This document shows positions 30,260 to 54,659 of a DNA stretch of 64,000 nucleotides, one piece after another. The notes beneath the pieces were generated by a model. It worked only from the letters and a program-made list of their open reading frames with translations, was not told the DNA's origin and did not search any database. How positions within the stretch are numbered: position 1 is the stretch's first letter; each line of letters starts with the position of its first letter. Location of the stretch: the IMG/VR virus record IMGVR_UViG_3300028569_002417, positions 161,528-225,527 of that record. One strand, given 5' to 3'. A program made the translations under genes and the position numbers.

Positions 30260-30291
30260 AATGCCTAGAAATTATTTTCTAGGCATTTTTT
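30260..30291 (+). terminator. Intrinsic terminator upstream of cas12i
   Basis: aatgcctagaaa / tttctaggcatt plus T run. Confidence 0.75.
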
Positions 30292-30292
30292 C

Positions 30293-30321
30293 TTTACAAA
30301 AAAATAAAAGTGTTGTACACT
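30293..30321 (+). promoter_or_regulatory. Sigma70-like promoter of cas12i
   Basis: TTTACA (30293-30298), 17 nt, TACACT (30316-30321); same boxes at 52716-52744. Confidence 0.65.
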
Positions 30322-30362
30322 GCTCAGTAGAAATCCGCCACAAGGGCTACAGGAGCAGTGTC

Positions 30363-33300
30363 ATGGTCAGCGATAGCACTATTCGTCCTTATGCCAGCAA
30401 ATTGGCACCAAATGATCCTAAGCTGAAAATGCTTAACGATACATTCAATTGGCTAGACCATGCATACAAGGTATTCTTTGATGTATCAGTAGCACTTTTT
30501 GGTGCTATTGAACATGAAACTGCTCAAGAATTGATAGGTGAAAAAAGTAAATTCGACGCAGATCTAATCTGTGCTATCATGTGGTTTCGCCTAGAAGAAA
30601 AATCCGATAACCCCGGACCTCTCCAAACAGTAGAACAAAGAATGAGACTGTTCCAGAAATACTCTGGACACGAACCATCTTCTTTCACACAAGAATACAT
30701 CAAAGGAAACATAGATTCAGAAAAATATGAATGGGTAGATTGTCGTCTCAAATTTATAGACTTAGCTAGAAATATTAACACAACCCAAGAATCACTCAAA
30801 ATTGATGCATACACTCTTTTCATGAATAAATTAATTCCTGTAAGCAAAGATGATGAATTCAACGCTTATGGCTTGATTTCACAACTTTTTGGAACAGGAA
30901 AGAAAGAAGACAGATCAATCAAAGCAGCAATGCTTGAAGAAATCTCAAATATTCTCGCAGACAAAAAGCCAGATACTTGGGAAGAATATCATGATTTAAT
31001 TAAAAAAAATTTCAATGTTGATAATTACAAAGAACTTAAAGAAAAATTAAGCGCAGGAAGCAGTGGCCGTGATAGTTCTCTAGTAATTGACCTCAAAGAA
31101 GAAAAAACAGGACTACTTCAACCTAACTTTATCAAAAATCGTATTGTTAAATTCAGAGAAGATGCTGATAAAAAGAAAACTGTATTTTTATTGCCCAATA
31201 GAATGAAATTGAGAGAATTTATTGCTTCACAAATTGGACCATTTGAACAAAATAGCTGGTCAGCTGTTCTAAACAGGTCTATGGCTGCAATTCAATCTAA
31301 AAATAGCAGCAACATTCTATACACTAATGAAAAAGAAGAACGTAATAATGAAATTCAGGAATTGTTAAAAAAAGACATCTTGTCAGCAGCAAGTATATTA
31401 GGCGATTTTCGTCGTGGAGAATTTAACAGATCAGTGGTTTCAAAAAACCACTTGGGAGCAAGACTCAATGAGCTTTTTGAAATATGGCAAGACTTAACAA
31501 TGGATGATGGCATTAGAAAATATGTTGATCTTTGTAAAGATAAGTTTTCCAGAAGACCTGTAAAGGCATTGCTTCAATACATTTATCCATATTTCGATAA
31601 AATTACTGCAAAGCAATTCCTTGATGCAGCTAGTTACAACACACTTGTTGAAACCAATAATCGTAAGAAGATTCATCCAACTGTCACAGGACCAACAGTT
31701 TGTAATTGGGGGCCTAAGTCTACAATTAATGGATCAATAACACCACCAAATCAAATGGTCAAAGGAAGACCAGCAGGATCTCATGGAATGATCTGGGTCA
31801 CAATGACAGTCATAGATAATGGACGTTGGATCAAGCATCACCTTCCATTCTATAACTCACGCTATTATGAAGAACACTATTGCTACAGAGAAGGTCTGCC
31901 TACAAAAAATCAACCTCGTACTAAACAACTTGGAACTCAAGTAGGATCAACAATTTCTGCCACAAGTCTTGCTGCTCTTAAATCTCAAGAAGAGCAAGAC
32001 AGAAGGAATGATCGTAAAAATCGATTCAAAGCCCATAAATCTATCATCAGATCACAAGAGAACATTGAATATAATGTTGCTTTTGATAAGTCAACTAATT
32101 TTGATGTAACACGAAAAAATGGTGAGTTTTTCATCACTATCTCTTCTAGAGTTGCTACTCCAAAATATAGTTATAAATTAAATATTGGCGATATGATCAT
32201 GGGACTGGATAATAACCAAACAGCCCCATGCACATATTCAATTTGGCGTGTAGTGGAAAAAGATACAGAAGGTAGCTTCTTTCATAATAAAATTTGGCTT
32301 CAATTGGTAACTGACGGGAAAATAACAAGCATTGTTGACAATAACCGTCAAGTCGATCAGCTTTCTTATGCTGGCATCGAATACTCCAATTTTGCAGAAT
32401 GGAGAAAAGATCGTCGCCAATTCCTTCGATCAATTAACGAAGATTACGTTAAAAAATCAGATAATTGGCGTAATATGAATCTTTATCAATGGAATGCTGA
32501 ATATTCTCGTTTGCTTCTTGATGTCATGAAAGAAAATAAGGGCAAAAATATTCAAAATACATTCCGTGCAGAAATAGAAGAATTAATTTGTGGTAAGTTC
32601 GGTATAAGATTGGGAAGTCTTTTTCATCATTCACTCCAATTTCTTACTAATTGTAAGAGTCTTATATCATCTTACTTTATGCTTAACAATAAAAAAGAAG
32701 AGTATGATCAAGAGTTGTTTGACAGTGATTTCTTTAGGTTGATGAAAAGTATTGGGGACAAACGTGTTAGGAAACGCAAAGAGAAATCCTCAAGGATTTC
32801 ATCTACAGTATTGCAAATTGCAAGGGAAAATAATATCAAGTCTTTGTGTGTTGAAGGTGATTTACCTACAGCCACAAAGAAGACTAAGCCAAAACAAAAT
32901 CAAAAATCAATAGATTGGTGCGCCCGTGCTGTTGTCAAAAAATTGAATGATGGCTGTAAGGTATTGGGAATTAATTTACAGGCCATTGATCCAAGAGACA
33001 CAAGTCACTTAGATCCATTTGTTTATTATGGAAAGAAATCTACTAAAGTTGGAAAAGAAGCTCGATATACAATTGTTGAGCCATCCAATATAAAGGAATA
33101 CATGACAAATAGATTCGATGACTGGCATCGAGGGGTTACCAAAAAGTCAAAAAAGGGTGATGTTCAAACAAGCACTACTGTTCTTCTTTATCAAGAAGCT
33201 TTAAGGCAATTTGCTAGTCATTACGAACTTGATTTTGACTCTTTGCCAAAAATGAAATTCTATGATTTGGCTAAAAGATTGGGAGATCATGAAAAAGTGA

Positions 33301-33503
33301 TTATCCCTTGTCGTGGAGGAAGAGCTTATCTGTCTACTTATCCAGTGACAAAAGATTCCTCGAAAATAACTTTCAATGGTAGAGAAAGATGGTATAATGA
33401 ATCAGATGTGGTAGCTGCTGTTAACATCGTGCTGAGAGGCATAAGAGATGAAGACGAGCAGCCTGATGATGCCAAAAAACAGGCACTCGCTCGCACAAAG
33501 TAA
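30363..33503 (+). CDS. cas12i: Type V-I CRISPR effector Cas12i (1046 aa)
   Basis: AGGAG RBS then MVSDSTIRPY; LFQKYSGHEPS, FGTGKK, RuvC I IMGLDNN, RuvC II LCVEGDL, DWCARAV, TSHLDPFV, RGGRAYL, RuvC III SDVVAAVNI; adjacent array with AGAAATCCGTC..TTGACGG handle. Confidence 0.93.
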   Translation: MVSDSTIRPYASKLAPNDPKLKMLNDTFNWLDHAYKVFFDVSVALFGAIEHETAQELIGEKSKFDADLICAIMWFRLEEKSDNPGPLQTVEQRMRLFQKYSGHEPSSFTQEYIKGNIDSEKYEWVDCRLKFIDLARNINTTQESLKIDAYTLFMNKLIPVSKDDEFNAYGLISQLFGTGKKEDRSIKAAMLEEISNILADKKPDTWEEYHDLIKKNFNVDNYKELKEKLSAGSSGRDSSLVIDLKEEKTGLLQPNFIKNRIVKFREDADKKKTVFLLPNRMKLREFIASQIGPFEQNSWSAVLNRSMAAIQSKNSSNILYTNEKEERNNEIQELLKKDILSAASILGDFRRGEFNRSVVSKNHLGARLNELFEIWQDLTMDDGIRKYVDLCKDKFSRRPVKALLQYIYPYFDKITAKQFLDAASYNTLVETNNRKKIHPTVTGPTVCNWGPKSTINGSITPPNQMVKGRPAGSHGMIWVTMTVIDNGRWIKHHLPFYNSRYYEEHYCYREGLPTKNQPRTKQLGTQVGSTISATSLAALKSQEEQDRRNDRKNRFKAHKSIIRSQENIEYNVAFDKSTNFDVTRKNGEFFITISSRVATPKYSYKLNIGDMIMGLDNNQTAPCTYSIWRVVEKDTEGSFFHNKIWLQLVTDGKITSIVDNNRQVDQLSYAGIEYSNFAEWRKDRRQFLRSINEDYVKKSDNWRNMNLYQWNAEYSRLLLDVMKENKGKNIQNTFRAEIEELICGKFGIRLGSLFHHSLQFLTNCKSLISSYFMLNNKKEEYDQELFDSDFFRLMKSIGDKRVRKRKEKSSRISSTVLQIARENNIKSLCVEGDLPTATKKTKPKQNQKSIDWCARAVVKKLNDGCKVLGINLQAIDPRDTSHLDPFVYYGKKSTKVGKEARYTIVEPSNIKEYMTNRFDDWHRGVTKKSKKGDVQTSTTVLLYQEALRQFASHYELDFDSLPKMKFYDLAKRLGDHEKVIIPCRGGRAYLSTYPVTKDSSKITFNGRERWYNESDVVAAVNIVLRGIRDEDEQPDDAKKQALARTK

Positions 33504-33630
33504 GTCCTTGTCTTCAAAAGACTTACGAAATTTGCTCTTTGACAAGTAGGTTATTCTCATGTGGGTTAAGCATAACCTCTCGCTAATTGGATCGTAAGTC
33601 CTTACTCAGTATGGTATTGTGGGACAAGCC

Positions 33631-34554
33631 CCCACAATACCTGAGAAATCCGTCCTTCGTTGACGGTGCAATCCATCATGCATAATATAATTTTCATCGC
33701 TTCCCACAATACCTGAGAAATCCGTCCTTCGTTGACGGACCTATTGCTCGCCTGCCAGTGCCTTTCCCAGCGAGTTCCCACAATACCTGAGAAATCCGTC
33801 CTACGTTGACGGCGATGAAAATATACTATGTTATGCAGAAGATTTTATCCCACAATACCTGAGAAATCCGTCCTACGTTGACGGCTATGAGTAATTTTGA
33901 AGCTACAGATAGTTTTCCATACCCACCCACAATACCTGAGAAATCCGTCCTACGTTGACGGTCAAGTAATTCGATGCGTGTTTTATTTGTTTGAACCACC
34001 CACAATACCTGAGAAATCCGTCCTACGTTGACGGCTCCATCGAGACTTGTCGGCCCCACAATACCTGAGAAATCCGTCCTACGTTGACGGCTTGGGCAGT
34101 CCCGAAGGGTCTAACTGCAAAACGCTACCCACAATACCTAAGAAATCCGTCCTACGTTGACGGGGACTAGAGGCGCAGCAGGCTGAAGTTGAAGCTTATG
34201 CCCACAATACCTGAGAAATCCGTCCTCCGTTGACGGCCTGAGCCATGCCGCCAGTTGCTTGGCTTTAGAATTCCCACAATACCTGAGAAATCCGTCCTAC
34301 GTTGACGGGGTTGGAAGAAAAGAAGGGACGATCTTTTTGTTTTGTCCCACAATACCTGAGAAATCCGTCCTACGTTGACGGTGCGATTCAAAAGAGAATG
34401 TTGGGCTTGGCCAGTGGGCCCCACAATACCTGAGAAATCCGTCCTACGTTGATGGGCCGTGTTCTCGATGACGACCCACAATACCTGAGAAATCCGTCCT
34501 GCGTTGACGGAATGAGGTGACCTTCGTAAAGGTAGGCCCACAACACCCAAGAAA
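33631..34554 (+). CRISPR. CRISPR array: 13 full 36-nt repeats, 1 truncated terminal repeat, 13 spacers
   Basis: Consensus CCCACAATACCTGAGAAATCCGTCCTACGTTGACGG starting at 33631, 33703, 33777, 33849, 33926, 33999, 34055, 34128, 34201, 34273, 34346, 34420, 34475; degenerate at 34537. Spacer lengths 36,38,36,41,37,20,37,37,36,37,38,19,26. Confidence 0.98.
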
Positions 34555-37972: not shown

Positions 37973-38893
37973 TCACTCATCTTCATCTTCATCTTCATCT
38001 TCATCTTCATCTTCATCTTCATCTTCATCTTCATCTTCATCTTCATCTTCATCTTCATCTTCATCTTCATCTTCATCTTCATCTTCGTCTTCTTCTTCAT
38101 CTTCGTCTTCGTCTTCATCTTCATCTTCATCTTCATCTTCATCTTCATCTTCATCTTCATCTTCATCTTCATCTTCATCTTCATCTTCATCTTCATCTTC
38201 GTCTTCATCTTCGTCTTCGTCTTCATCTTCATCTTCGTCTTCATTTGAAGCTATTTCAAAGATTGATTGGTTGAGTTTACGATTGAAGGATTCGTTGGTG
38301 GCAACTAGTGTTGCGATTGTTTCTATTGCTTCTGGCTGTTGTGACATGGTTAGCAAGAAAGCTTCAAAAAGACCTGTGCGCTTCATTTGGAGAACTGCGT
38401 CAAGGATATACTTTTCGTTTTCTTCGCAAACAGAGATTGCCTCTTTGATTGCTTCGTAGGCATGAGAAGGGTTGACGCTAAGACCAGCAAGTCTTTCGTT
38501 ACGAACCTTTTTTGTGAATTCGGCAAGGCTTAGTCTTTTGTTGCTATCAAGCCATTCTTGAGTCGTTTTGACATGAGGATAGCTACCTTTTTCTTTTGGT
38601 TCTTCGCCATGTGCTTTGGTTGGCATTTTTTCATAACCTTTGCCACCTTTATGACCAAGACCGTCAGAACCGAATCCTTTGTTGCGGTCAGCAGCATCTT
38701 TTCCGCCCTTGTAGGGAGAAACGCTACCGCTTTGGCTTTTGCCACCTGCATTTTTAGGGGTTTTGCCAAGACTTGGTGCTGTTGGTGTTGGGCCTTCATA
38801 ATCTGCTACGATATCGACTCTTGCTTTTTGTCCTTTGTCGTGAGCCTTTTTTCTCATTGACTCAACATAGGACTGAAAATTTTGGTTTACCAT
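37973..38893 (-). CDS. Protein with 89-residue Asp/Glu C-terminal tract
   Basis: GGAG RBS, MVNQNFQSYVES; (ED)n tail. Confidence 0.7.
   Translation of the reverse strand: MVNQNFQSYVESMRKKAHDKGQKARVDIVADYEGPTPTAPSLGKTPKNAGGKSQSGSVSPYKGGKDAADRNKGFGSDGLGHKGGKGYEKMPTKAHGEEPKEKGSYPHVKTTQEWLDSNKRLSLAEFTKKVRNERLAGLSVNPSHAYEAIKEAISVCEENEKYILDAVLQMKRTGLFEAFLLTMSQQPEAIETIATLVATNESFNRKLNQSIFEIASNEDEDEDEDEDEDEDEDEDEDEDEDEDEDEDEDEDEDEDEDEDEDEDEDEEEDEDEDEDEDEDEDEDEDEDEDEDEDEDEDEDEDEDEDE
37976..38242 (-). repeat. Hexanucleotide microsatellite (GAAGAT)n encoding (ED)n
   Basis: Directly visible; occasional GAC variants and one EEE. Confidence 0.97.
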
Positions 38894-38972: not shown

Positions 38973-39324
38973 GGGGCCGTATTTAGAATTCGATTCGGAT
39001 GGACGGCTTGTGAGTGGCATGTAGAGGTTGGTCAGAAGGCCTCTTAAAAAATCTGACTAAAGCCTTAACTGGCGAAACTGTTTACGCTATGGCTGCATAA
39101 GTGCAACCACAGACTTAGGTAGCGATGCTAGTAGCGACCGAAAGTTTGATGTAAAATCTGGCTGGTCATATGCATTTCAATGGGCAAATGACGAGATAAA
39201 GTTGATAGTGCTGAAAAAGGTTTTATTTGTTGTACCTTTTCAGATGACATCAAGCAATAAAATAAACATGTAGAGGCTCACAGGTAGTTATGCGAAGACA
39301 GCGGGGCGGGTCCGCTCGGCTCCA
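38973..39324 (+). ncRNA. ssrA: tmRNA; tag peptide (A)GETVYAMAA
   Basis: 5' GGGGCCG pairs with 3' CGGCTCC-A including G3-U; ATTCGA motif; TAACT-GGC resume codon 39071, stop 39098-39100; 352 nt. Confidence 0.9.
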
Positions 39325-39370
39325 CTTGCCATGAAGACCTCTTGTTCATAAAATAGAACAAGGGGTCTTT

Positions 39371-48517: not shown

Positions 48518-49686
48518 AATTAATTAGTTTTTGTCGGCGCAATCCCGGCAATGGTAAGTTGCTATCCAAAGAAGTATTAATTCCTTCTTTGAAATTTACT
48601 GTATTCAAATTCAATAAAAGACCTAAGCCAGAGAATGTTAAAAGAATACTGATAATTAGTTGTTTTTCTGAGTTTGGTTGTGAAACAATTGGTTTGATGT
48701 ATTGTATTCCCAAGATCATTTCGAGTAATCCCGGTGCTTATGTAATTTGTGTTGGTTGGTATGGGAGAGAATATCTTTACAGGCATCTTGTTGATGAGTT
48801 TTGGGAAATTGAAGAAAACGTCATGAATTTGCGTGAATATTCAAATGCTTTTTATAATTCTTCTTTTAATATTCGTCGTCTTGAAAAGTGTCTTGAAAAT
48901 TATGGTGTAGTTTTCAAGTGTGCCAATATGGGACAATTATGTGTCAATAATACTTGTGAAATTTGTAAAAAAGTTTGGGCTTCTGACAATGTTTCCACTG
49001 GATGTCCTTCTTGTTATTCTCAAAAAATAAAAAAAGGTTATCTTGCCGATGTTGCTTATCATCGTAAGTTTGCTGTACAGATTCCAAGACCATCTATGAA
49101 AGTTCAGAATAAAGCTAAAGATTATTTGAAGCCAAATTCTGTTGGTATTTTTGCAAGAGGCAGGACGATGTATGGTCGTAATCTATCTCCAGAATTTTAT
49201 ATAAAGCTTATAAAATGTTTGGAGGAAAAGGGTTACAATCCTATATGGCTGGGTGAAAAGCAGAGTGTCATTCCTTGTCCTGTTGATCACATCATTGATT
49301 TTAGTCGTCTTCCTGAATCAAGGGATTTGGAACTTACTTTGGCGATTATATCAAATTTGCAATTTACTGTTCAGTTTTGGACAGCTTCTACGAGGCTGGC
49401 TGGAATGATGGGTGTTCCTTGGATATTATTTGAAAGTCCTGATCAAATAGCGGGTAATGGGCAAGAGGGCAAGAGGATTGTTCTTACGACTGATTACAAC
49501 AAGAAAAAATTAATTTTGGCTCATTATTTTAATGTTGTTGAAGATCATGAAAAAGCATTGAAAATCTTGGATCAGGCTATAGACGAAATGAATGAAGACA
49601 ATTGGGAAGATATGCTGGGTTTGATAGAAGATGCTGGCATAGTTAACGATATGCTTAAAAAACAACTTGAATGGAGGTCGATGTGA
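48514..49686 (+). CDS. GT9-like (GT-B) glycosyltransferase with Zn-ribbon insert
   Basis: RILII..EFG, RNLSPEFY, IWLGE, TASTRLAGMMGVP. Confidence 0.55.
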   Translation: MKLISFCRRNPGNGKLLSKEVLIPSLKFTVFKFNKRPKPENVKRILIISCFSEFGCETIGLMYCIPKIISSNPGAYVICVGWYGREYLYRHLVDEFWEIEENVMNLREYSNAFYNSSFNIRRLEKCLENYGVVFKCANMGQLCVNNTCEICKKVWASDNVSTGCPSCYSQKIKKGYLADVAYHRKFAVQIPRPSMKVQNKAKDYLKPNSVGIFARGRTMYGRNLSPEFYIKLIKCLEEKGYNPIWLGEKQSVIPCPVDHIIDFSRLPESRDLELTLAIISNLQFTVQFWTASTRLAGMMGVPWILFESPDQIAGNGQEGKRIVLTTDYNKKKLILAHYFNVVEDHEKALKILDQAIDEMNEDNWEDMLGLIEDAGIVNDMLKKQLEWRSM

Positions 49687-50825
49687 GTTCGGTTGCTGAT
49701 TTTTTACGCAGGGCAGCGGAGCGTAATGGTTTCCATAGAGATCGTTATGAAGAGAAGAGGATTCCAACTGACTTCACGAATGTTTGCATTTTGCCTTTTT
49801 TTGGTGATTTGAGAAGCATGACGATTTTGTCAAGTTATATTCTGCATCGATATCGTGATGAGTCAAGAGGTTCAAAATATTTTATAGTTGCTTCATGGCC
49901 CGGATTTCAGGGTTTGTTTCCATATGCTGATGAGTATTGGTCTTTGACTGATGATTCGATTATGAAGAGGTTTTACGATCATTCTGAGGGAATGCGTAAT
50001 AGTTCTGATTTGAATGTTTCGTACATGAGGAATATGAATGAGTTTTTCAGGGATGTGATTGATGCGGTTGAGATTCAGAAGTATTATCGGAATGGATTTA
50101 CTAATTACTTTTTTGATAAATTTCAGGACACGAAAAGATTTTTACCTTTTATTCCGAGTTCATCAATTATTGGTAAGGAATTCAATAGAAGTTTGATAAC
50201 GAAGCCGGGTTATAAGGTATTTTTACATCCATCTATTTATTGTAGGTTTTGGCATAATGGTATAAGCGACCACATGAAGGTCAAGAAAGAATTTTATATT
50301 GATTTGGTTAATTTCTTGTCCAATAAGGATGTTACTTGTGTTTTGTGGCAAAATGCATTTTCTTATGATCTTGCTGATTCTCTTGAAGAAAAGTGTGTGT
50401 TTTTGAGAGAGCAGGACGTAACAAAGGCTTTGGCAGCGATGCGTGCTTGTGGTTGTGTTCTTGACACGTTCAATGGTTTGTCGAGGTTGTCTTTGCTGGC
50501 AAGAACTCCCTTTTTGTCTATTGATGAAAGGTCGAGGTTTTCAGGAACGAAGGAATTCGAGATTGATCATTTGAGTGGCAATCAAATTCCGTATCAGTAT
50601 ATTTTTTCATTTTCTACTATCATAACTGATGGCGATGCTGGTTTGTGGAAGAGTGATATTTTTCCAAGTATTTATCGAAAGCTTGAGGAATTTTTACCTA
50701 GCCTAAACCGTGATGAATGGCCTTCTACTGCGGAGAGTATTGAAAATTTACCTTATGAAGATTTTGTGCAACCGCAGAAAAAAAAGAAACTTGGCACAAG
50801 ATTTATCAAGGTAGCAAAAGAATAA
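49683..50825 (+). CDS. GT9-like (GT-B) glycosyltransferase
   Basis: FFGDL, PYADEYW, VFLHP, NGLSRLSLLARTP. Confidence 0.5.
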   Translation: MSSVADFLRRAAERNGFHRDRYEEKRIPTDFTNVCILPFFGDLRSMTILSSYILHRYRDESRGSKYFIVASWPGFQGLFPYADEYWSLTDDSIMKRFYDHSEGMRNSSDLNVSYMRNMNEFFRDVIDAVEIQKYYRNGFTNYFFDKFQDTKRFLPFIPSSSIIGKEFNRSLITKPGYKVFLHPSIYCRFWHNGISDHMKVKKEFYIDLVNFLSNKDVTCVLWQNAFSYDLADSLEEKCVFLREQDVTKALAAMRACGCVLDTFNGLSRLSLLARTPFLSIDERSRFSGTKEFEIDHLSGNQIPYQYIFSFSTIITDGDAGLWKSDIFPSIYRKLEEFLPSLNRDEWPSTAESIENLPYEDFVQPQKKKKLGTRFIKVAKE

Positions 50826-50835
50826 GGAATAAAGT

Positions 50836-51123
50836 ATGGCTTGTAAAGTTGAATTGCGTGATCTTCCTATGAATCCAAGTTGGTATGAAAAGGAGATTGC
50901 ATTCAAAAAAATGTTTACTGCTTTCAAAAAGCAGGTTGCGGAAGCTGGTATTCTGCATGATTTTAAGAAGAGAGAGTACTATGAGACTCCCGGTCAAATT
51001 CGTCGCCGTAAGAGTCGTGAGGCGGAAAATGTGCGTTTGAAGGAAAAGCTGCGTGAGAATTTCCCAGAAAGACGTAAGCCGAAGAAGTCTGATAACAAGA
51101 AAACAAAAGCCAAGGGTGAATAA
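50836..51123 (+). CDS. rpsU: Ribosomal protein bS21-like
   Basis: FKKQVAEAGILHDFKKREYYETPGQIRRRK. Confidence 0.85.
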   Translation: MACKVELRDLPMNPSWYEKEIAFKKMFTAFKKQVAEAGILHDFKKREYYETPGQIRRRKSREAENVRLKEKLRENFPERRKPKKSDNKKTKAKGE

Positions 51124-51386
51124 TGCCATCTAAAAAAGGTACGATCATGAGCCTGAATGTTGATCCCAGCATTCAGGAAAAGATGAAGGCAGTTGCCAAG
51201 AGGCGAAACATTAGTGTTTCCAAGCTTGTTCGTGATTTGGTTGACAATAATCTTCCAGATGCTGACGAGGAAGTAGATGTTGTGATCTTTAAGATTCCAA
51301 CTGCCATGAGGACAACTCCTGATTCTCTTAAGCAATGGCTGCAAAATCGTATTGATGCTGTAGTAAGGGCTTTGACAACATCATGA
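51123..51386 (+). CDS. Ribbon-helix-helix DNA-binding protein
   Basis: MSLNVDPSIQEKMKAVAKRRNISVSKLVRDLV. Confidence 0.7.
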   Translation: MPSKKGTIMSLNVDPSIQEKMKAVAKRRNISVSKLVRDLVDNNLPDADEEVDVVIFKIPTAMRTTPDSLKQWLQNRIDAVVRALTTS

Positions 51387-51877
51387 AATTCAAAGAACCT
51401 CTGAAAATTGTTCCAGTTGCTGATATCCCTAAGGCAAAAGATGTTCCTCTTGAAAGCCTTATGGATATATTCCGTCTTTGCACAAAGATGGAAAAAATTT
51501 GCGATGAAAATGATGGAATAGGTTTATCAGCAGTTCAAGTTGGAGTTCCATGGAATCTTTTCATTGTTAAGCGCAATCGTCATTTTGAATATTATGTCAA
51601 TTGCGAGTATACAGGCCATGGAGACAAGATAAAGTCAGTTGAGGGCTGCTTGTCTCTTAGGAATGAGGATGGCACTTTTAGAAGGTTTGAGGTTGAGAGA
51701 TTTTCTAAGACACGAATAAAAGGCAAGCAACTTGTTGTTTCAGGGATGCCTTCTCTTGTTTTGAATGATGTTGATCGTGAAGAGATTAATCTTTTCAGTA
51801 TTGTTTTTCAGCATGAATGCGATCACAGTCGAGATGTACTCGTTTCGCAAATAGGTCGTGAGGTGGAATTGGCCTAA
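51383..51877 (+). CDS. def: Peptide deformylase
   Basis: GIGLSAVQVG, EGCLS, QHECDH. Confidence 0.92.
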   Translation: MKFKEPLKIVPVADIPKAKDVPLESLMDIFRLCTKMEKICDENDGIGLSAVQVGVPWNLFIVKRNRHFEYYVNCEYTGHGDKIKSVEGCLSLRNEDGTFRRFEVERFSKTRIKGKQLVVSGMPSLVLNDVDREEINLFSIVFQHECDHSRDVLVSQIGREVELA

Positions 51878-51903
51878 GAAATCCGTCTTCCGTTAAAGGA
51901 CGG
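51873..51903 (+). repeat. Solitary degenerate Cas12i repeat
   Basis: CCTAAGAAATCCGTC-TTCCGTTAAAG-GACGG; first 15 nt identical to part of array repeat 8; CCGTC/GACGG stem intact. Confidence 0.7.
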
Positions 51904-51920
51904 AGCTAAGGGAATGAATT

Positions 51921-52199
51921 ATGTTAAGTCTCAAACAATTAGAAGATGTGTGTCTGAATTCAGATGCGACTTCTCAAAAATGTCGATATATTTGTCAAGA
52001 TGAAGTTGACAAAAATAAGTTTTACTGCTTAAAACTTTCTGCTAAAGCTAGCAAAATAGATAATGAAATTGAAAATTATATCAAAGTAATTAGCTTAAAA
52101 GGCAGAGATCCTTCTGATGAAAATTTACCATTAGGGGACAATTGTTCTGGTTATCCTTTTCTTAGGCATATCGAACAAGGTTACGACAAGAAAAATTAG
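51921..52199 (+). CDS. Hypothetical Cys-containing protein
   Basis: AAGGGA RBS; 92 aa. Confidence 0.6.
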   Translation: MLSLKQLEDVCLNSDATSQKCRYICQDEVDKNKFYCLKLSAKASKIDNEIENYIKVISLKGRDPSDENLPLGDNCSGYPFLRHIEQGYDKKN

Positions 52200-52696
52200 A
52201 GACTTTCTAGTCTCTCTCTGATTATCTGGTAGATATCCTTTCCTTTGTTTTCTTCAACAGCAGAGGAAAGGATATTTGCTTCTAGCTCATTACTGTTAAA
52301 TCTTGCTATCTCTCTTACCATTAGTTCGTTCGTCTTTTCGCTGCTTATAGCTCTGTTTCGATAGTAGAACAATAGCATTGCTATGACAACTAATGCGAAG
52401 ATGAAGATTAGTGCTCCATCGCCTTGGATTATTTGAACTCCTGTGTTTTCGTTTCGTGAAATTGCGCCGTTTATGTTGACTAGGCCGCTTTGTATTTCTT
52501 TCAGAAGACTATTTTGGGCTGATAGATCTTGCCTAGTCTTCATGAGTTCGGCCATTACCCCATTTTGGTTTGTGCGTATATCCTCTATTTTACCATTTTG
52601 ATTTTGTATTTTGGGGTTGTTTCTTGGGTTGAAGTTTGCACATCCTACCAAGTTTAACAAGGTTGCGGCTGCAATAATCAACAAAAATTTGTACAT
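52196..52696 (-). CDS. Putative lipoprotein with second TM helix
   Basis: GGAGG RBS; MYKFLLII..LVGC lipobox. Confidence 0.6.
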   Translation of the reverse strand: MYKFLLIIAAATLLNLVGCANFNPRNNPKIQNQNGKIEDIRTNQNGVMAELMKTRQDLSAQNSLLKEIQSGLVNINGAISRNENTGVQIIQGDGALIFIFALVVIAMLLFYYRNRAISSEKTNELMVREIARFNSNELEANILSSAVEENKGKDIYQIIRERLESL

Positions 52697-52715
52697 ACAT
52701 CCTCCACAATATGTA

Positions 52716-52744
52716 TTTACAAGTGGGGAATTTCTTTGTACACT
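52716..52744 (+). promoter_or_regulatory. Sigma70-like promoter, same boxes as cas12i promoter
   Basis: TTTACA (52716-52721), 17 nt, TACACT (52739-52744). Confidence 0.65.
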
Positions 52745-52747
52745 ATG

Positions 52748-52773
52748 CTGAGAAATCCGTTTCATGTTGACGG
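52748..52773 (+). repeat. Solitary Cas12i repeat handle (crRNA-like leader)
   Basis: CTGAGAAATCCGTTTCATGTTGACGG vs array CTGAGAAATCCGTCCTACGTTGACGG: 22/26 identical, same length, stem kept by a U-G pair. Confidence 0.85.
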
Positions 52774-52799
52774 ATGATCAACCCGCTGGAGGATTTGGC

Positions 52800-53210
52800 G
52801 TGGCTCAAGGCAAGGATGTTTTTTTCTTTGGTGATGAATTTGATGATGAAAATTCATCAAGTGAAAGCGCACAGATTGCAAATGAATTTAAGCAGAATGC
52901 TAATTCATTAGTTGTACATCATTTGTCAAATTACTTCAAGGACAAGATGTTGCACACAGGAGGAAATGTTCCTGATCAATTACTAAATAGTCATAAAAGA
53001 ATATCTATGGTTTTGAACTACACTGTTTCTAATGGTGTAGATCATGCTCATGAAAGACTAGAATTTTCTGAGGGGAGAAACAATGATGATGAGAATTCAG
53101 AGCTTATCGTCACTGTTCTTCATGGAATAGCCAAAAGTGGTGTTCCGAAGGAATTTGCTGGTGGTATGCTTTGTCTGCACTTGGAATTAATAGAAGGGAT
53201 AGATTTTTGA
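52800..53210 (+). CDS. Hypothetical acidic protein
   Basis: GGAGGA 52788-52793 then GTG (MAQGKDVFFFG). Confidence 0.6.
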   Translation: MAQGKDVFFFGDEFDDENSSSESAQIANEFKQNANSLVVHHLSNYFKDKMLHTGGNVPDQLLNSHKRISMVLNYTVSNGVDHAHERLEFSEGRNNDDENSELIVTVLHGIAKSGVPKEFAGGMLCLHLELIEGIDF

Positions 53211-53521
53211 ATCTTGATTTATTATTGTTGTCAAGGCAATTTGAGACTGTCGAATTGCCGAAGGAAAAGAAATACCTCCTGAGATATTTTGAAAATCCAG
53301 TTCAGGAGGCTTTTCTTAAATATTTCTTTGTATTTGGTAATTATGTTAATTTTTGTGACCACACTGGTCATTTCGTGCAGAAAAAATGGTTAAAACATCT
53401 GCATGAAAAATTAAAAACAATTGAAAAAGCCCACAAAGATGCCAGATCTAACTTTGACATGGCTGGACTTGTTGAAATTGAAAAAGGTGAATTCAAATTC
53501 AGTCGTCATCTTCCTAAATAG
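53207..53521 (+). CDS. Hypothetical protein
   Basis: TTG overlapping upstream stop. Confidence 0.55.
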   Translation: MNLDLLLLSRQFETVELPKEKKYLLRYFENPVQEAFLKYFFVFGNYVNFCDHTGHFVQKKWLKHLHEKLKTIEKAHKDARSNFDMAGLVEIEKGEFKFSRHLPK

Positions 53522-53524
53522 TGT

Positions 53525-53767
53525 ATGGCACTAATATCATTCGGCGATTGGCGTAAAAAATTTGATGAAGCAAGCCCTACTACAAGATTAAGGGCTGGAA
53601 TTGAGGCGGGTAATTATCCCATGTCTGCTGGGGTGGCTATGTCTCGATCCACACCAAGCCCATCTTTTGTAAAGAAGGCAATTGAAGAATTAGGATCACC
53701 TGAACATCCTAAAAGGAAAAATAAGACTAAAAAGAAACGTAGGAATTCCAAGAAAAGGGAAAAATGA
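53525..53767 (+). CDS. Small basic protein, capsid-targeting-like N-terminus
   Basis: TAAATA 4 nt before ATG; MALISFGDWRKKFDE. Confidence 0.6.
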   Translation: MALISFGDWRKKFDEASPTTRLRAGIEAGNYPMSAGVAMSRSTPSPSFVKKAIEELGSPEHPKRKNKTKKKRRNSKKREK

Positions 53768-54162
53768 TTTTTTTCAATGAATGGATGCAGGAAAGATTCG
53801 ATGAGGCTAAAAAGTCTCGTCGCACCCCTGTTCCTCATTCTGATATTGAAAAATGGATGCGTTCTTTAGAGCTTCTCAAGAAAGATCTTGAGGAATTGCA
53901 GAAAGCCAAGAAGAATGCTGCCCAAAGATTTGCTAGAGAAGCAAAAATCAAGAAGGAAAAAGAAAAGAAGGCTAAAGATGCCAAGAAGTTAAAAAAGAAA
54001 AAAGATTCAGAAATAGATAAAAAATCTGAAAAAGAACCTGAAGTTGAGAAGAAAGATAAAAAACCTGAAGTCAAAAAATATGATTCCAAGAAAAATGTTG
54101 TATCTGATAAGTTCAGACAGATTAAGAGTCAAAGGCGTAAAAATAATAAGCCTAGAGACTAA
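53764..54162 (+). CDS. Lys-rich protein, capsid-targeting-like N-terminus
   Basis: MIFFNEWMQERFDE. Confidence 0.6.
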   Translation: MIFFNEWMQERFDEAKKSRRTPVPHSDIEKWMRSLELLKKDLEELQKAKKNAAQRFAREAKIKKEKEKKAKDAKKLKKKKDSEIDKKSEKEPEVEKKDKKPEVKKYDSKKNVVSDKFRQIKSQRRKNNKPRD

Positions 54163-54212
54163 TTATTTTTAAGTTGGCAGTCTCCACTATAATTAAATAG
54201 CGGAGATAGATC

Positions 54213-54659
54213 ATGAGTACTGAAAATATTTGCAACGATGATTCCTTAGATCAATCTAAGGCAAAAAATGCCAGAGATGTTCTGAAAGGCATTATTGTTT
54301 CAGAATCAAATCTTGAAACATATTTAATTGCAGTAGCTGTTCATAAAGATTCATCCAAGAATTTTATCAATAGAATAAGTTGTAAGAAGGGCATACCTCT
54401 TGATGGATATGTTTATGATGCTCAATCAGACAGTTATTTCATAGAATGCACTGATTTTTTGCATGTAGGGGTAATTCCTGTTTCTTTTGTTGCTACTGCT
54501 AAAGATTCTTATTTTTGGAAAATGAATATACCTTTGCCTGAAGCTGTCATTAAAAAGTATTTGACTGAGATCCAAAAGAAGGATTTGAAAAACTTTAAGA
54601 GTCATTTTAGCTCTCAAGATTACATGATTAATTATGTTCAAATGGTTAATCCAAACTGA
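54213..54659 (+). CDS. Hypothetical protein
   Basis: GGAG RBS. Confidence 0.6.
   Translation: MSTENICNDDSLDQSKAKNARDVLKGIIVSESNLETYLIAVAVHKDSSKNFINRISCKKGIPLDGYVYDAQSDSYFIECTDFLHVGVIPVSFVATAKDSYFWKMNIPLPEAVIKKYLTEIQKKDLKNFKSHFSSQDYMINYVQMVNPN

What the first reader, a model, noticed from the sequence alone, without database searches (positions are those of the whole stretch)
51873..51923. Solitary repeat between def and the next gene
CCTAAGAAATCCGTC is identical to part of array repeat 8, and the CCGTC/GACGG stem is intact and extended, with 4 extra nt inside. It overlaps the def stop, lacks a U tract, and the next 17 nt hold the RBS of ORF 51921. It could be a Cas12i cut site that splits the rpsU-RHH-def transcript from downstream genes.
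Basis: partly seen in the sequence, partly recalled or inferred. Interest (0 to 1): 0.7.

Follow-up and report, generated by a model that had tools for sequence, protein, structure and literature searches.

The report
Cas12i repeat copies in phage mRNA leaders
The hairpin after the deformylase gene is a genuine stray copy of this giant phage's own Cas12i CRISPR repeat, one of at least ten such copies that sit just ahead of phage genes, which suggests (but does not prove) that the phage uses its Cas12i protein to cut or bind its own messenger RNAs.

Summary
Window 51873-51903 is a copy of the 3' 27 nt of the Cas12i array repeat (array 33631-34510), with 4 extra nt. A covariance model built without it scores it at 31.4 bits, E 1.6e-4.

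It is a 32-nt insertion that the closest relatives lack. It supplies the last codon and the stop codon of def, and lies 17 nt ahead of ORF 51921.

It is not solitary. At least 10 such copies score 22 bits or more outside the array in this huge phage. Most lie 0-30 nt upstream of a same-strand gene start, and half follow a promoter that would start the RNA at the crRNA 5' end. One of them (52747-52773) is only 874 nt downstream.

In 32 related phage records (5.06 Mb), none has Cas12i and none has a hit above 20.8 bits.

The finding's copy keeps the A-G-A tail that Cas12i2 needs for pre-crRNA cutting, and the phage Cas12i keeps the cutting residues. The predicted cut is at 51876|51877, inside the def stop codon. 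The 4 extra nt, however, lie at the bulge that Cas12i2 reads, and no cleavage is shown. The RNA data are too thin to decide.

Most likely these are Cas12i-responsive leaders that cut the mRNA, block translation, or both. The kind is known (solitary repeat units); this arrangement is a new variant.

The parts
51873..51903 (+). Solitary Cas12i repeat copy (SRU-C), the finding. It matches the 3' 27 nt of the repeat plus 4 extra nt.
   Evidence: identity to the repeat. (covariance model hit, 31.4 bits, E 1.6e-4; the model was built without it). (a 32-nt insertion relative to L076/L077).
51876..51877 (+). Predicted Cas12i scissile bond, between the 2nd and 3rd nt of the def stop codon. The downstream product would start at A51877.
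   Evidence: Inference from the 23-nt mature repeat and the A(-23) rule for Cas12i2 (PMC7567891), applied to the sequence. Not observed.
51877..51882 (+). 6-nt single-stranded 5' tail AGAAAT, equivalent to repeat positions -23 to -18.
   Evidence: This tail is conserved in 7 of the 10 non-array copies of 22 bits or more (also in J), although it does not pair.
51883..51887 (+). 5' stem arm CCGTC.
51895..51898 (+). The 4 extra nt AAAG, between the conserved UU and the 3' arm.
   Evidence: insertion relative to the model. (they extend the stem by 2 bp in the predicted fold).
51899..51903 (+). 3' stem arm GACGG.
51383..51877 (+). Peptide deformylase gene. Its last codon (GCC) and stop codon (TAA) are supplied by the inserted element.
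   Evidence: Pfam PF01327; the C-terminus is ...VELA in variants carrying the insertion and ...VELS in those without it.
51908..51914 (+). Ribosome-binding site of ORF 51921. It lies at positions 5-11 of what would be the guide part of a crRNA.
   Evidence: The stretch is conserved in L076/L077.
51921..52199 (+). 92-aa Cys-containing ORF of unknown function. It is the gene behind the element and is conserved in all relatives.
52716..52744 (+). Sigma-70-like promoter TTTACA-17-TACACT. The A of AGAAAT (52751) lies 7 nt after the -10 hexamer.
   Evidence: the only + strand promoter-like site in 50700-53300. It is conserved in L076, where the -10 is TATAAT.
52747..52773 (+). Second repeat copy (SRU-D), of canonical length, with stem CCGTT/GACGG.
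   Evidence: 34.5 bits. The L105 variant changes the loop G to A, which keeps the 6th pair. A hairpin lies at the same place in L080-82.
52788..53210 (+). RBS GGAGGA (52788-93) and the probable true start GTG 52800 of the ORF behind SRU-D.
   Evidence: RBS plus GTG are conserved in relatives, and gene callers give 136 aa.
30261..33503 (+). cas12i gene (1080 aa).
   Evidence: Cas12i2 6ltp, E 1e-101. (processing residues conserved).
33631..34510 (+). CRISPR array: 13 repeats of 36 nt, on the same strand as all the copies in the window.

Best explanation
SRU-C is a recently inserted copy of the crRNA handle of the phage's own type V-I (Cas12i) system. It belongs to a set of at least 10 handle copies placed in the leaders of phage genes.

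Proposed mechanism, all of it inferred:
1. Cas12i recognises the AGAAAU tail plus the hairpin on the rpsU-RHH-def-ORF51921 transcript.
2. It cuts between 51876 and 51877 with its metal-independent RNase site.
3. It stays bound to the new 5' end. The first ~15-20 nt downstream, which hold the RBS (51908-14) and the start codon (51921), then lie in the guide channel.

The effect would be to uncouple ORF 51921 from def and, most likely, to repress its translation once Cas12i has accumulated. The upstream def mRNA would lose its stop codon.

In the other copies a promoter provides the 5' end, so binding alone would be enough.

Shown here: the element's origin, its anatomy, its status as an insertion, the existence of the family, and the restriction of the family to the Cas12i-bearing lineage. 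Inferred: binding, cutting and the effect on translation.
For: 1. Origin and significance.

2. The family. There are 10 non-array hits of 22 bits or more in 0.276 Mb of this phage (G000 plus the G002 extension), against none above 20.8 bits in 5.06 Mb of 32 related records. None of those 32 records encodes Cas12i (positive control).

3. Placement. In 7 of 10 loci the hairpin ends 0-30 nt before a same-strand start codon. My estimate of the chance probability is about 1e-10.

4. Promoters. In 6 of 12 copies a tool-called promoter ends at most 12 nt upstream, P about 2.5e-7. This places the transcription start at or within a few nt of the mature crRNA 5' end.

5. The unpaired tail AGAAAU is conserved. 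Cas12i2 reads this part base-specifically and needs it for cutting (PMC7567891).

6. Processing determinants. Copies with their own promoter (A, B, E) have lost A(-23), G(-22) or A(-21). C, which has no tool-called promoter, keeps all three.

7. The Cas12i processing residues are conserved.

8. A pair-preserving change (U.G to U-A) occurs at the 6th pair of SRU-D in L105.

9. SRU-C is fixed and unchanged in a sub-lineage sampled in several lakes and years.

10. RNA, weak evidence: 3 of 4 metatranscriptomes hold contigs on ORF 51921, and none holds one on def or the RHH gene.

11. Engineered precedent: Cas proteins repress mRNAs that carry their crRNA motif in the 5' UTR, and Cas12a does so without its RNase activity (PMC10115826).
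Against: - No cleavage or binding has been observed.
- The AAAG insertion enlarges the bulge, or extends the stem, exactly where Cas12i2 makes base contacts.
- One RNA contig (51870-52027) crosses the predicted cut.
- SRU-C is young and is absent from all relatives outside one sub-lineage, so it could be neutral.
- In the nearest sister lineage SRU-D is degenerate (15 bits) and the SRU-A loop is changed. Constraint on these elements is therefore not strong, or that lineage differs.
- The genes behind the copies share no function.
- One copy (I) lies inside a gene, and one (F) is antisense to the 3' end of mscL.
Confidence: 0.4

Rival explanations
1. RNA decoys of the Racr type. The handle copies are transcribed in quantity and soak up Cas12i. 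The target would be the Cas12i of competing Cas12i-carrying phages during co-infection, or the phage's own Cas12i, to buffer its activity. The downstream ORFs are simply co-transcribed, and some might be Acr proteins.
For: - Solitary repeat units placed directly after promoters in viruses are known, and several act as RNA anti-CRISPRs. One of them is co-transcribed with an acr gene (PMC10651486).
- This phage has many copies with promoters.
- Related phages carry arrays of about 30 spacers with the same handle.
Against: - The phage itself encodes the matching Cas12i and array, so decoys would disarm its own system.
- Known Racrs are usually found in elements without cas genes.
- The hairpins are placed tightly before RBS and start codons, which a pure decoy does not need.
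- The downstream genes include an amidoligase and an AAA ATPase, not typical small Acr genes.
- SRU-C has no tool-called promoter.
Confidence: 0.2
2. SRU-C is a neutral relic. A repeat fragment was copied into the def/ORF 51921 junction by microhomology-mediated recombination or template switching, and it has no function at this site, even if other copies are functional.
For: - It is a precise 32-nt insertion flanked by CTAAG microhomology, and all outgroups lack it.
- It deviates from the canonical geometry by 4 nt.
- It has no promoter.
- The carrier lineage is only about 1% divergent, so its conservation says nothing about constraint.
Against: - It landed in the same position class as the other copies (17 nt before a start codon, same strand).
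- It retains every nucleotide known to matter for cutting.
- It had to supply an in-frame stop codon for def.
- It is fixed across samples from different years and studies.
Confidence: 0.22
3. Cas-independent leader hairpins. The promoter-plus-stem-loop units stabilise mRNA 5' ends, or serve as recombination cassettes like the promoter-early stem-loops of T4-type phages. Their likeness to the repeat then only reflects where the hairpin sequence came from.
For: - Promoter and hairpin are duplicated as a unit in copies F and J.
- Mobile promoter-stem-loop cassettes exist in T4-type phages (PMC2839356; title and abstract seen).
- 5' hairpins generally stabilise bacterial mRNAs (general knowledge).
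Against: - The unpaired tail AGAAAU and the loop/bulge nucleotides are conserved, which a plain stabilising hairpin does not require.
- The elements are absent from 5.06 Mb of relatives that lack Cas12i.
- Gene order around C and D is the same in relatives without the elements, so there is no sign of cassette shuffling here.
Confidence: 0.1
4. crRNA-like guides of the crlRNA, CreA or CreR type. The sequence after each hairpin would act as a partial guide that directs Cas12i to repress a promoter in the phage or the host.
For: Regulatory cr-like RNAs with solitary repeats are described for several CRISPR types (PMC10120712; bioRxiv 2024.12.27.630466).
Against: - The first 20 nt after each of 11 copies have no match better than 4-5 mismatches anywhere in 0.276 Mb of the phage, and no TTN-flanked candidate stands out.
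- These stretches are RBS and start regions under coding constraint.
- The host genome is unknown, so host targets could not be tested.
Confidence: 0.05

Closest known systems
Solitary repeat units (SRUs) of viruses and RNA anti-CRISPRs (Racrs) (Faure et al. 2019, as cited in PMC10651486; Camara-Wilpert et al. 2023, PMC10651486)
   Same: Single CRISPR-repeat copies outside arrays in a viral genome, often directly downstream of a promoter and sometimes co-transcribed with a downstream gene. They are expected to bind the cognate Cas protein.
   Different: Here the virus itself encodes the cognate effector and array. There are at least 10 dispersed copies. They sit at a fixed short distance before RBS and start codons of ordinary phage genes. 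The finding's copy lies inside an operon and overlaps a stop codon. Type V-I is not among the cases tested in that work, as far as I could read.
Standalone repeat-like elements in CRISPR-cas loci (tracr-L, CreA/CreR, crlRNA, and the V-A SRUs next to cas12a; PMC10120712)
   Same: Repeat-derived RNAs that redirect or occupy the effector for regulation rather than defence.
   Different: Those elements lie within or beside the cas locus and work through a partially matching pseudo-spacer on a promoter. Here the copies lie 18 kb to more than 150 kb from cas12i, and no pseudo-spacer target was found.
Canonical Cas12i2 pre-crRNA repeat (PMC7567891)
   Same: A 6-nt tail AGAAAU, a 5-bp stem CCGUC/GACGG, an inner pair, a 3-nt loop and UU. 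The cut is predicted 5' of A(-23).
   Different: There are 4 extra nt before the 3' arm. No spacer or next repeat follows. What follows the hairpin is an mRNA leader.
Engineered Cas-responsive 5'-UTR switches (CARTRIDGE, PMC10115826; Cas12a direct repeat in mRNAs, PMC9943656)
   Same: A crRNA motif in an mRNA leader makes translation or stability depend on the Cas protein.
   Different: Those are synthetic and were tested in eukaryotic cells. This would be a natural counterpart in a phage, and it is untested.

Membership tests
Cas12i (type V-I) pre-crRNA processing substrate | A(-23), G(-22) and A(-21) directly 3' of the scissile bond, within a 6-nt unpaired tail (PMC7567891). | tested here: met
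   AGAAAT at 51877-51882, identical to the array repeats.
Cas12i (type V-I) pre-crRNA processing substrate | 5-bp stem CCGUC/GACGG at the fixed distance from the tail. | tested here: met
   51883-87 and 51899-903.
Cas12i (type V-I) pre-crRNA processing substrate | Inner geometry: a 6th pair, a 3-nt loop and a 2-nt bulge, 17 nt in all between tail and guide. | tested here: not met
   The 6th pair (U.G), the loop UCC and UU are present, but AAAG follows, giving 21 nt. The predicted fold is instead an 8-bp stem with a 7-nt loop. Whether the protein tolerates this is unknown.
Cas12i (type V-I) pre-crRNA processing substrate | A cognate Cas12i with intact RNase residues (K18, H485, H486 of Cas12i2). 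| tested here: met
   K54, H526 and H527 align to them.
Cas12i (type V-I) pre-crRNA processing substrate | It is actually cut by Cas12i. | not testable with these tools
   Only sparse assembled metatranscriptome contigs were available. One of them spans the site.
CRISPR array repeat | Regular repeat-spacer periodicity (about 72 nt here). | tested here: not met
   The nearest other copy is 874 nt away.
Solitary repeat unit (SRUFinder sense, PMC10651486) | Matches a known repeat, has no other repeat within 100 bp, and is intergenic. | tested here: met
   It overlaps def by only 5 nt.
Solitary repeat unit (SRUFinder sense, PMC10651486) | Usually directly downstream of a promoter and in an element without cas genes. 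| tested here: not met
   There is no tool-called promoter before C, only TGGAAT, which is TAGAAT in variants L104-106. cas12i and its array lie 18 kb upstream.
Racr (RNA anti-CRISPR) | Expressed as an abundant small RNA that inhibits the cognate effector. | not testable with these tools
   No small-RNA data and no interference assay are available.
crlRNA / CreA / CreR regulatory guides | A pseudo-spacer partially complementary to a PAM-flanked promoter target. | tested here: not met
   There is no candidate in 0.276 Mb of the phage. The host was not available.
Intrinsic terminator | A G+C-rich hairpin followed by a T run. | tested here: not met
   One search lists no terminator-like site at 51873-51925. 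The sequence after the stem is AGCTAAGG.

The most novel reading that the evidence does not exclude
A huge phage has turned its Cas12i into a sequence-specific RNA-binding and RNA-cutting regulator of its own genes. At least ten crRNA-handle copies in mRNA leaders would form a Cas12i-responsive regulon, a natural version of engineered Cas-responsive UTR switches. The copy at the end of def would, in addition, be cut inside the stop codon. That would create a non-stop def mRNA, which would feed the phage-encoded tmRNA (38973-39327) and so couple CRISPR, mRNA processing and ribosome rescue.
Probability: 0.25. Interest if true: 0.85.

Novelty: new variant of a known kind. Interest (0 to 1): 0.66.

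Why it matters
Solitary repeat units in viruses have so far been read as weapons against a host's CRISPR system. Here the virus owns the matching Cas12i, and the copies sit where they could control translation of its own genes.

If Cas12i binds or cuts these leaders, three things follow:
- It would be a natural case of a DNA-targeting class 2 effector that doubles as a post-transcriptional regulator.
- It would give a reason why huge phages keep compact, adaptation-less CRISPR systems.
- It would provide ready-made, orthogonal RNA switches for a nuclease already used in genome editing.

It is also directly testable with one protein and a few short RNAs.

Tried and rejected
1. Are ORF 51921 and the gene after the array (34568) paralogues, which would imply duplication of terminal repeat plus gene? 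No: BLASTP E 0.21. The shared ATGTTAAGTCT is probably chance.

2. A scan of viral contigs for the handle pattern gave 33 single hits. My own arithmetic, using an assumed collection size, puts that at about the chance level. Inspection showed coding-region matches. The 256-kb record G001 has no Cas12i, and its hits look like chance.

3. Relatives were sought with Cas12i and with the 384-aa neighbour gene in viral contigs and metagenome contigs. Only the window's own record and one near-identical record (G002) came back.

4. Contigs holding Cas12i homologues mostly break at the array. Two of them span it.

5. Pseudo-spacer targets within the phage: none. Array spacers against all fetched loci: none.

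6. Intrinsic terminator at the site: none.

7. RNA evidence: only Logan contigs of four metatranscriptomes, at depth 2-4, with no ends table. This is suggestive but not decisive.

8. Function of ORF 51921: no Pfam or PHROG hit, and the ESM Atlas model is poor (pLDDT 0.44).

9. The literal Cas12i2 repeat sequence, as I recalled it, was not found in the paper library. I relied instead on the nucleotide identities named in PMC7567891.

10. Complex prediction was not run. Cas12i plus RNA exceeds the 1000-residue limit, and a truncated protein would not test whether the enlarged hairpin is tolerated.

Full report
**Context**

The window is the last 64 kb of a 225.5-kb IMG/VR virus record, which CheckV estimates at 52% complete. 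It carries a tmRNA, ribosomal protein S21, a ribbon-helix-helix protein and a peptide deformylase.

It also carries a 1080-aa Cas12i, whose best solved relative is Cas12i2 at E 1e-101. The Cas12i gene is followed by a 13-repeat array at 33631-34510 on the + strand. A near-identical 168-kb record (G002) overlaps the window's record and extends it by 50 kb.

The phage is common in lake metagenomes from many studies.

**The observation**

- The 15-mer at 51873-87 equals part of repeat 8.
- Both stem arms are intact, and there are 4 extra nt (AAAG, 51895-98).
- The element overlaps the def stop codon (TAA, 51875-77).
- No T run follows.
- The 17 nt before the ATG at 51921 hold an RBS.

A covariance model (R1) was built from six array repeats, three repeats of a relative and six other solitary copies, without this one. 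It finds the element full-length at 31.4 bits, E 1.6e-4.

Folded alone, the extra nucleotides lengthen the stem to 8 bp and leave a 7-nt loop.

**Origin**

Homologues of def define a large clade of huge phages with conserved gene order: S21, RHH, def, the 92-aa ORF, a lipoprotein on the minus strand, then the next ORF.

In the closest sister lineage (L076/L077; Def 94% identical) the def stop codon is followed directly by the same RBS and ATG. Relative to that lineage the window has a precise 32-nt insertion that coincides with the model hit. The insertion is flanked by a CTAAG microhomology, and it supplies a new last codon and stop codon for def. More distant relatives also lack it.

The C-terminal residue of Def marks the two states. 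Eight variants at 160-164/164 identity end in A and carry the insertion where the DNA was seen. Six variants at 153-155/164 end in S.

The element is therefore young, discrete and fixed in one sub-lineage. At about 1% divergence, its own sequence conservation is uninformative.

**It is not solitary**

Hamming scans, pattern scans and model R1 find further copies.
- A: G000 40655-81.
- B1 and B2: a tandem pair at G000 49369-49427, minus strand.
- D: window 52747-73.
- E, F, G, H and I in the G002 extension, at 123592, 145192, 154446, 139546 and 150193.
- Two weak copies, J and K.

Ten copies score 22 bits or more in 0.276 Mb.

Seven of the ten loci have the hairpin ending 0-30 nt before a same-strand start codon. 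The rough chance probability is 1e-10.

The promoter scan places a sigma-70-like site ending at most 12 nt upstream of A, B, D, F, J and K. That gives P of about 2.5e-7. For D the A of AGAAAU lies 7 nt after the -10 hexamer, so transcription would start at the mature crRNA 5' end.

F and J share both promoter and hairpin. C and K share the inner sequence.

**Link to Cas12i**

An alignment of the conserved gene behind copy A retrieved 43 related viral loci. In the 32 records that could be searched (5.06 Mb, four of them complete genomes), none encodes a Cas12i homologue. The same search does find Cas12i in G002. The best R1 hit in those 32 records is 20.8 bits.

At the orthologous leaders of genes A and D, relatives have the promoter and the RBS but no hairpin (L100-103, L083/84). 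Intermediate relatives have a diverged hairpin (L080-82) or a decayed one (L076).

The copies therefore arose with, and depend on, the CRISPR-Cas12i module.

**What Cas12i needs**

For Cas12i2 the following are established (PMC7567891).
- The mature repeat is 23 nt: a 6-nt 5' tail, then a stem-loop described as a 6-bp stem, a 2-nt bulge and a 3-nt loop.
- The cut is metal-independent and lies 5' of A(-23).
- A(-23) is essential, and G(-22) and A(-21) are important. Nucleotides upstream of the cut are not.
- K18, H485 and H486 catalyse the cut.
- The protein makes unusually many base contacts to the tail, bulge and loop.

The same layout holds for Cas12i1 (PMC8190297).

The window's Cas12i has K54, H526 and H527 at the aligned positions.

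Read with this layout, the array loop C-U-N-N-G-U-U becomes a C-G pair, a variable 3-nt loop and a conserved UU bulge. That matches the variation seen among repeats. It also fits the U.G to U-A change at the inner pair of copy D in variant L105.

SRU-C keeps the tail AGAAAU, the 5-bp stem, a U.G inner pair, a 3-nt loop and UU. It then has AAAG before the 3' arm. The determinants for cutting are therefore all present, but the geometry at the bulge is altered.

Copies that have their own promoter (A, B1, B2, E) have lost A(-23), G(-22) or A(-21). C has no tool-called promoter, so it would need cutting, and it keeps all three.

**Predicted consequence at the finding**

The cut would fall between 51876 and 51877, inside the UAA stop codon of def. 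The downstream RNA would begin with the handle, with the RBS at guide positions 5-11 and the AUG at positions 18-20. In the Cas12i1 binary complex about 15 guide nucleotides are held by the protein. The upstream def mRNA would end without a stop codon. That is notable in a phage that encodes a tmRNA, but it is pure inference.

**RNA data**

Only assembled contigs from four lake or marine metatranscriptomes were available, at depth 2-4. Three runs have a contig on ORF 51921 (51870-52027, 51958-52122, 52012-52162). None has one on def or the RHH gene (51170-51869). The most 5' contig starts at about 51868-70, so it crosses the predicted cut.

This fits a more abundant or more stable downstream RNA. 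It also shows uncut molecules (or DNA carry-over), and it proves nothing either way.

In variants L104-106 a synonymous G-to-A change turns TGGAAT (51864-69) into TAGAAT, 7 nt before AGAAAU. A weak internal promoter is therefore an alternative source of the downstream RNA.

**Alternatives**

Decoy RNAs of the Racr type are the nearest known function. They fit poorly with a phage that owns the cognate system, and with the tight placement before start codons.

Guide-like regulation found no target.

A Cas-independent hairpin does not explain the conserved unpaired tail, or the absence of the elements from Cas12i-less relatives.

For SRU-C alone, neutrality cannot be excluded.

**Verdict**

The element belongs to a known kind (solitary repeat units) in a new arrangement. 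The copies match the virus's own Cas12i, are dispersed through the genome and sit in gene leaders. The finding's copy lies at an operon junction and overlaps a stop codon.

Noticed in passing
window 33613-33641: In the array leader, an 11-nt stretch (33613-23) is the exact reverse complement of the 5' part of the first repeat (33631-41), giving a -20.9 kcal/mol hairpin. The same arrangement, with different and compensating sequences, occurs before the first repeat in two other Cas12i loci (L074 at 89% and L075 at 46% protein identity). This is a conserved leader 'anti-repeat' of unknown role.
   Followed up: partly
window 52747-52773 and 52716-52744: A second Cas12i repeat copy lies 874 nt downstream of the finding. 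It has a sigma-70-like promoter placed so that transcription would start at the crRNA 5' end. The ATG at 52764 in its loop is probably not a start codon. The conserved RBS plus GTG at 52800 fits better.
   Followed up: yes
G000:C1:49369-49427 (L010 3369-3427, minus strand): Two repeat copies lie in tandem with only 8 nt between the hairpins (no spacer). They sit directly after a TTGACT-17-TAGAAT promoter and about 30 nt before a 120-aa ORF.
   Followed up: partly
G002:C1:149729-149790 (L096 11829-11890): A weak family member (K) forms a 13-bp perfect hairpin starting with GGAAATCC. It is followed by four tandem GGAGGGC units, downstream of a ClpX-like gene.
   Followed up: no
window 34035-34063 and 34456-34474: Two of the 13 spacers are only 20 and 19 nt long, against 36-41 nt for the others. 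A decayed 14th repeat follows at about 34537.
   Followed up: no
window 38973-39327: A phage-encoded tmRNA (Rfam RF00023, 100 bits) that ARAGORN did not report.
   Followed up: no
window 52196-52765 (minus strand): The longest ORF overlaps the start of the next gene. A lipoprotein signal (lipobox LVGC) and a GGAGG RBS point to a real start at 52696. Gene callers in relatives agree, giving 166 aa.
   Followed up: partly
window 37977-38244: A 6-nt unit TCATCT is repeated about 45 times, inside overlapping ORFs on both strands.
   Followed up: no
window 53535-54236: This is the most strongly represented stretch in two metatranscriptomes (word depth 21-68, against 2-4 nearby). It covers two small lysine-rich ORFs (53525-53767 and 53764-54162). 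The RNA contigs carry a 153-nt replaced segment at 54013-54167 relative to the window.
   Followed up: no
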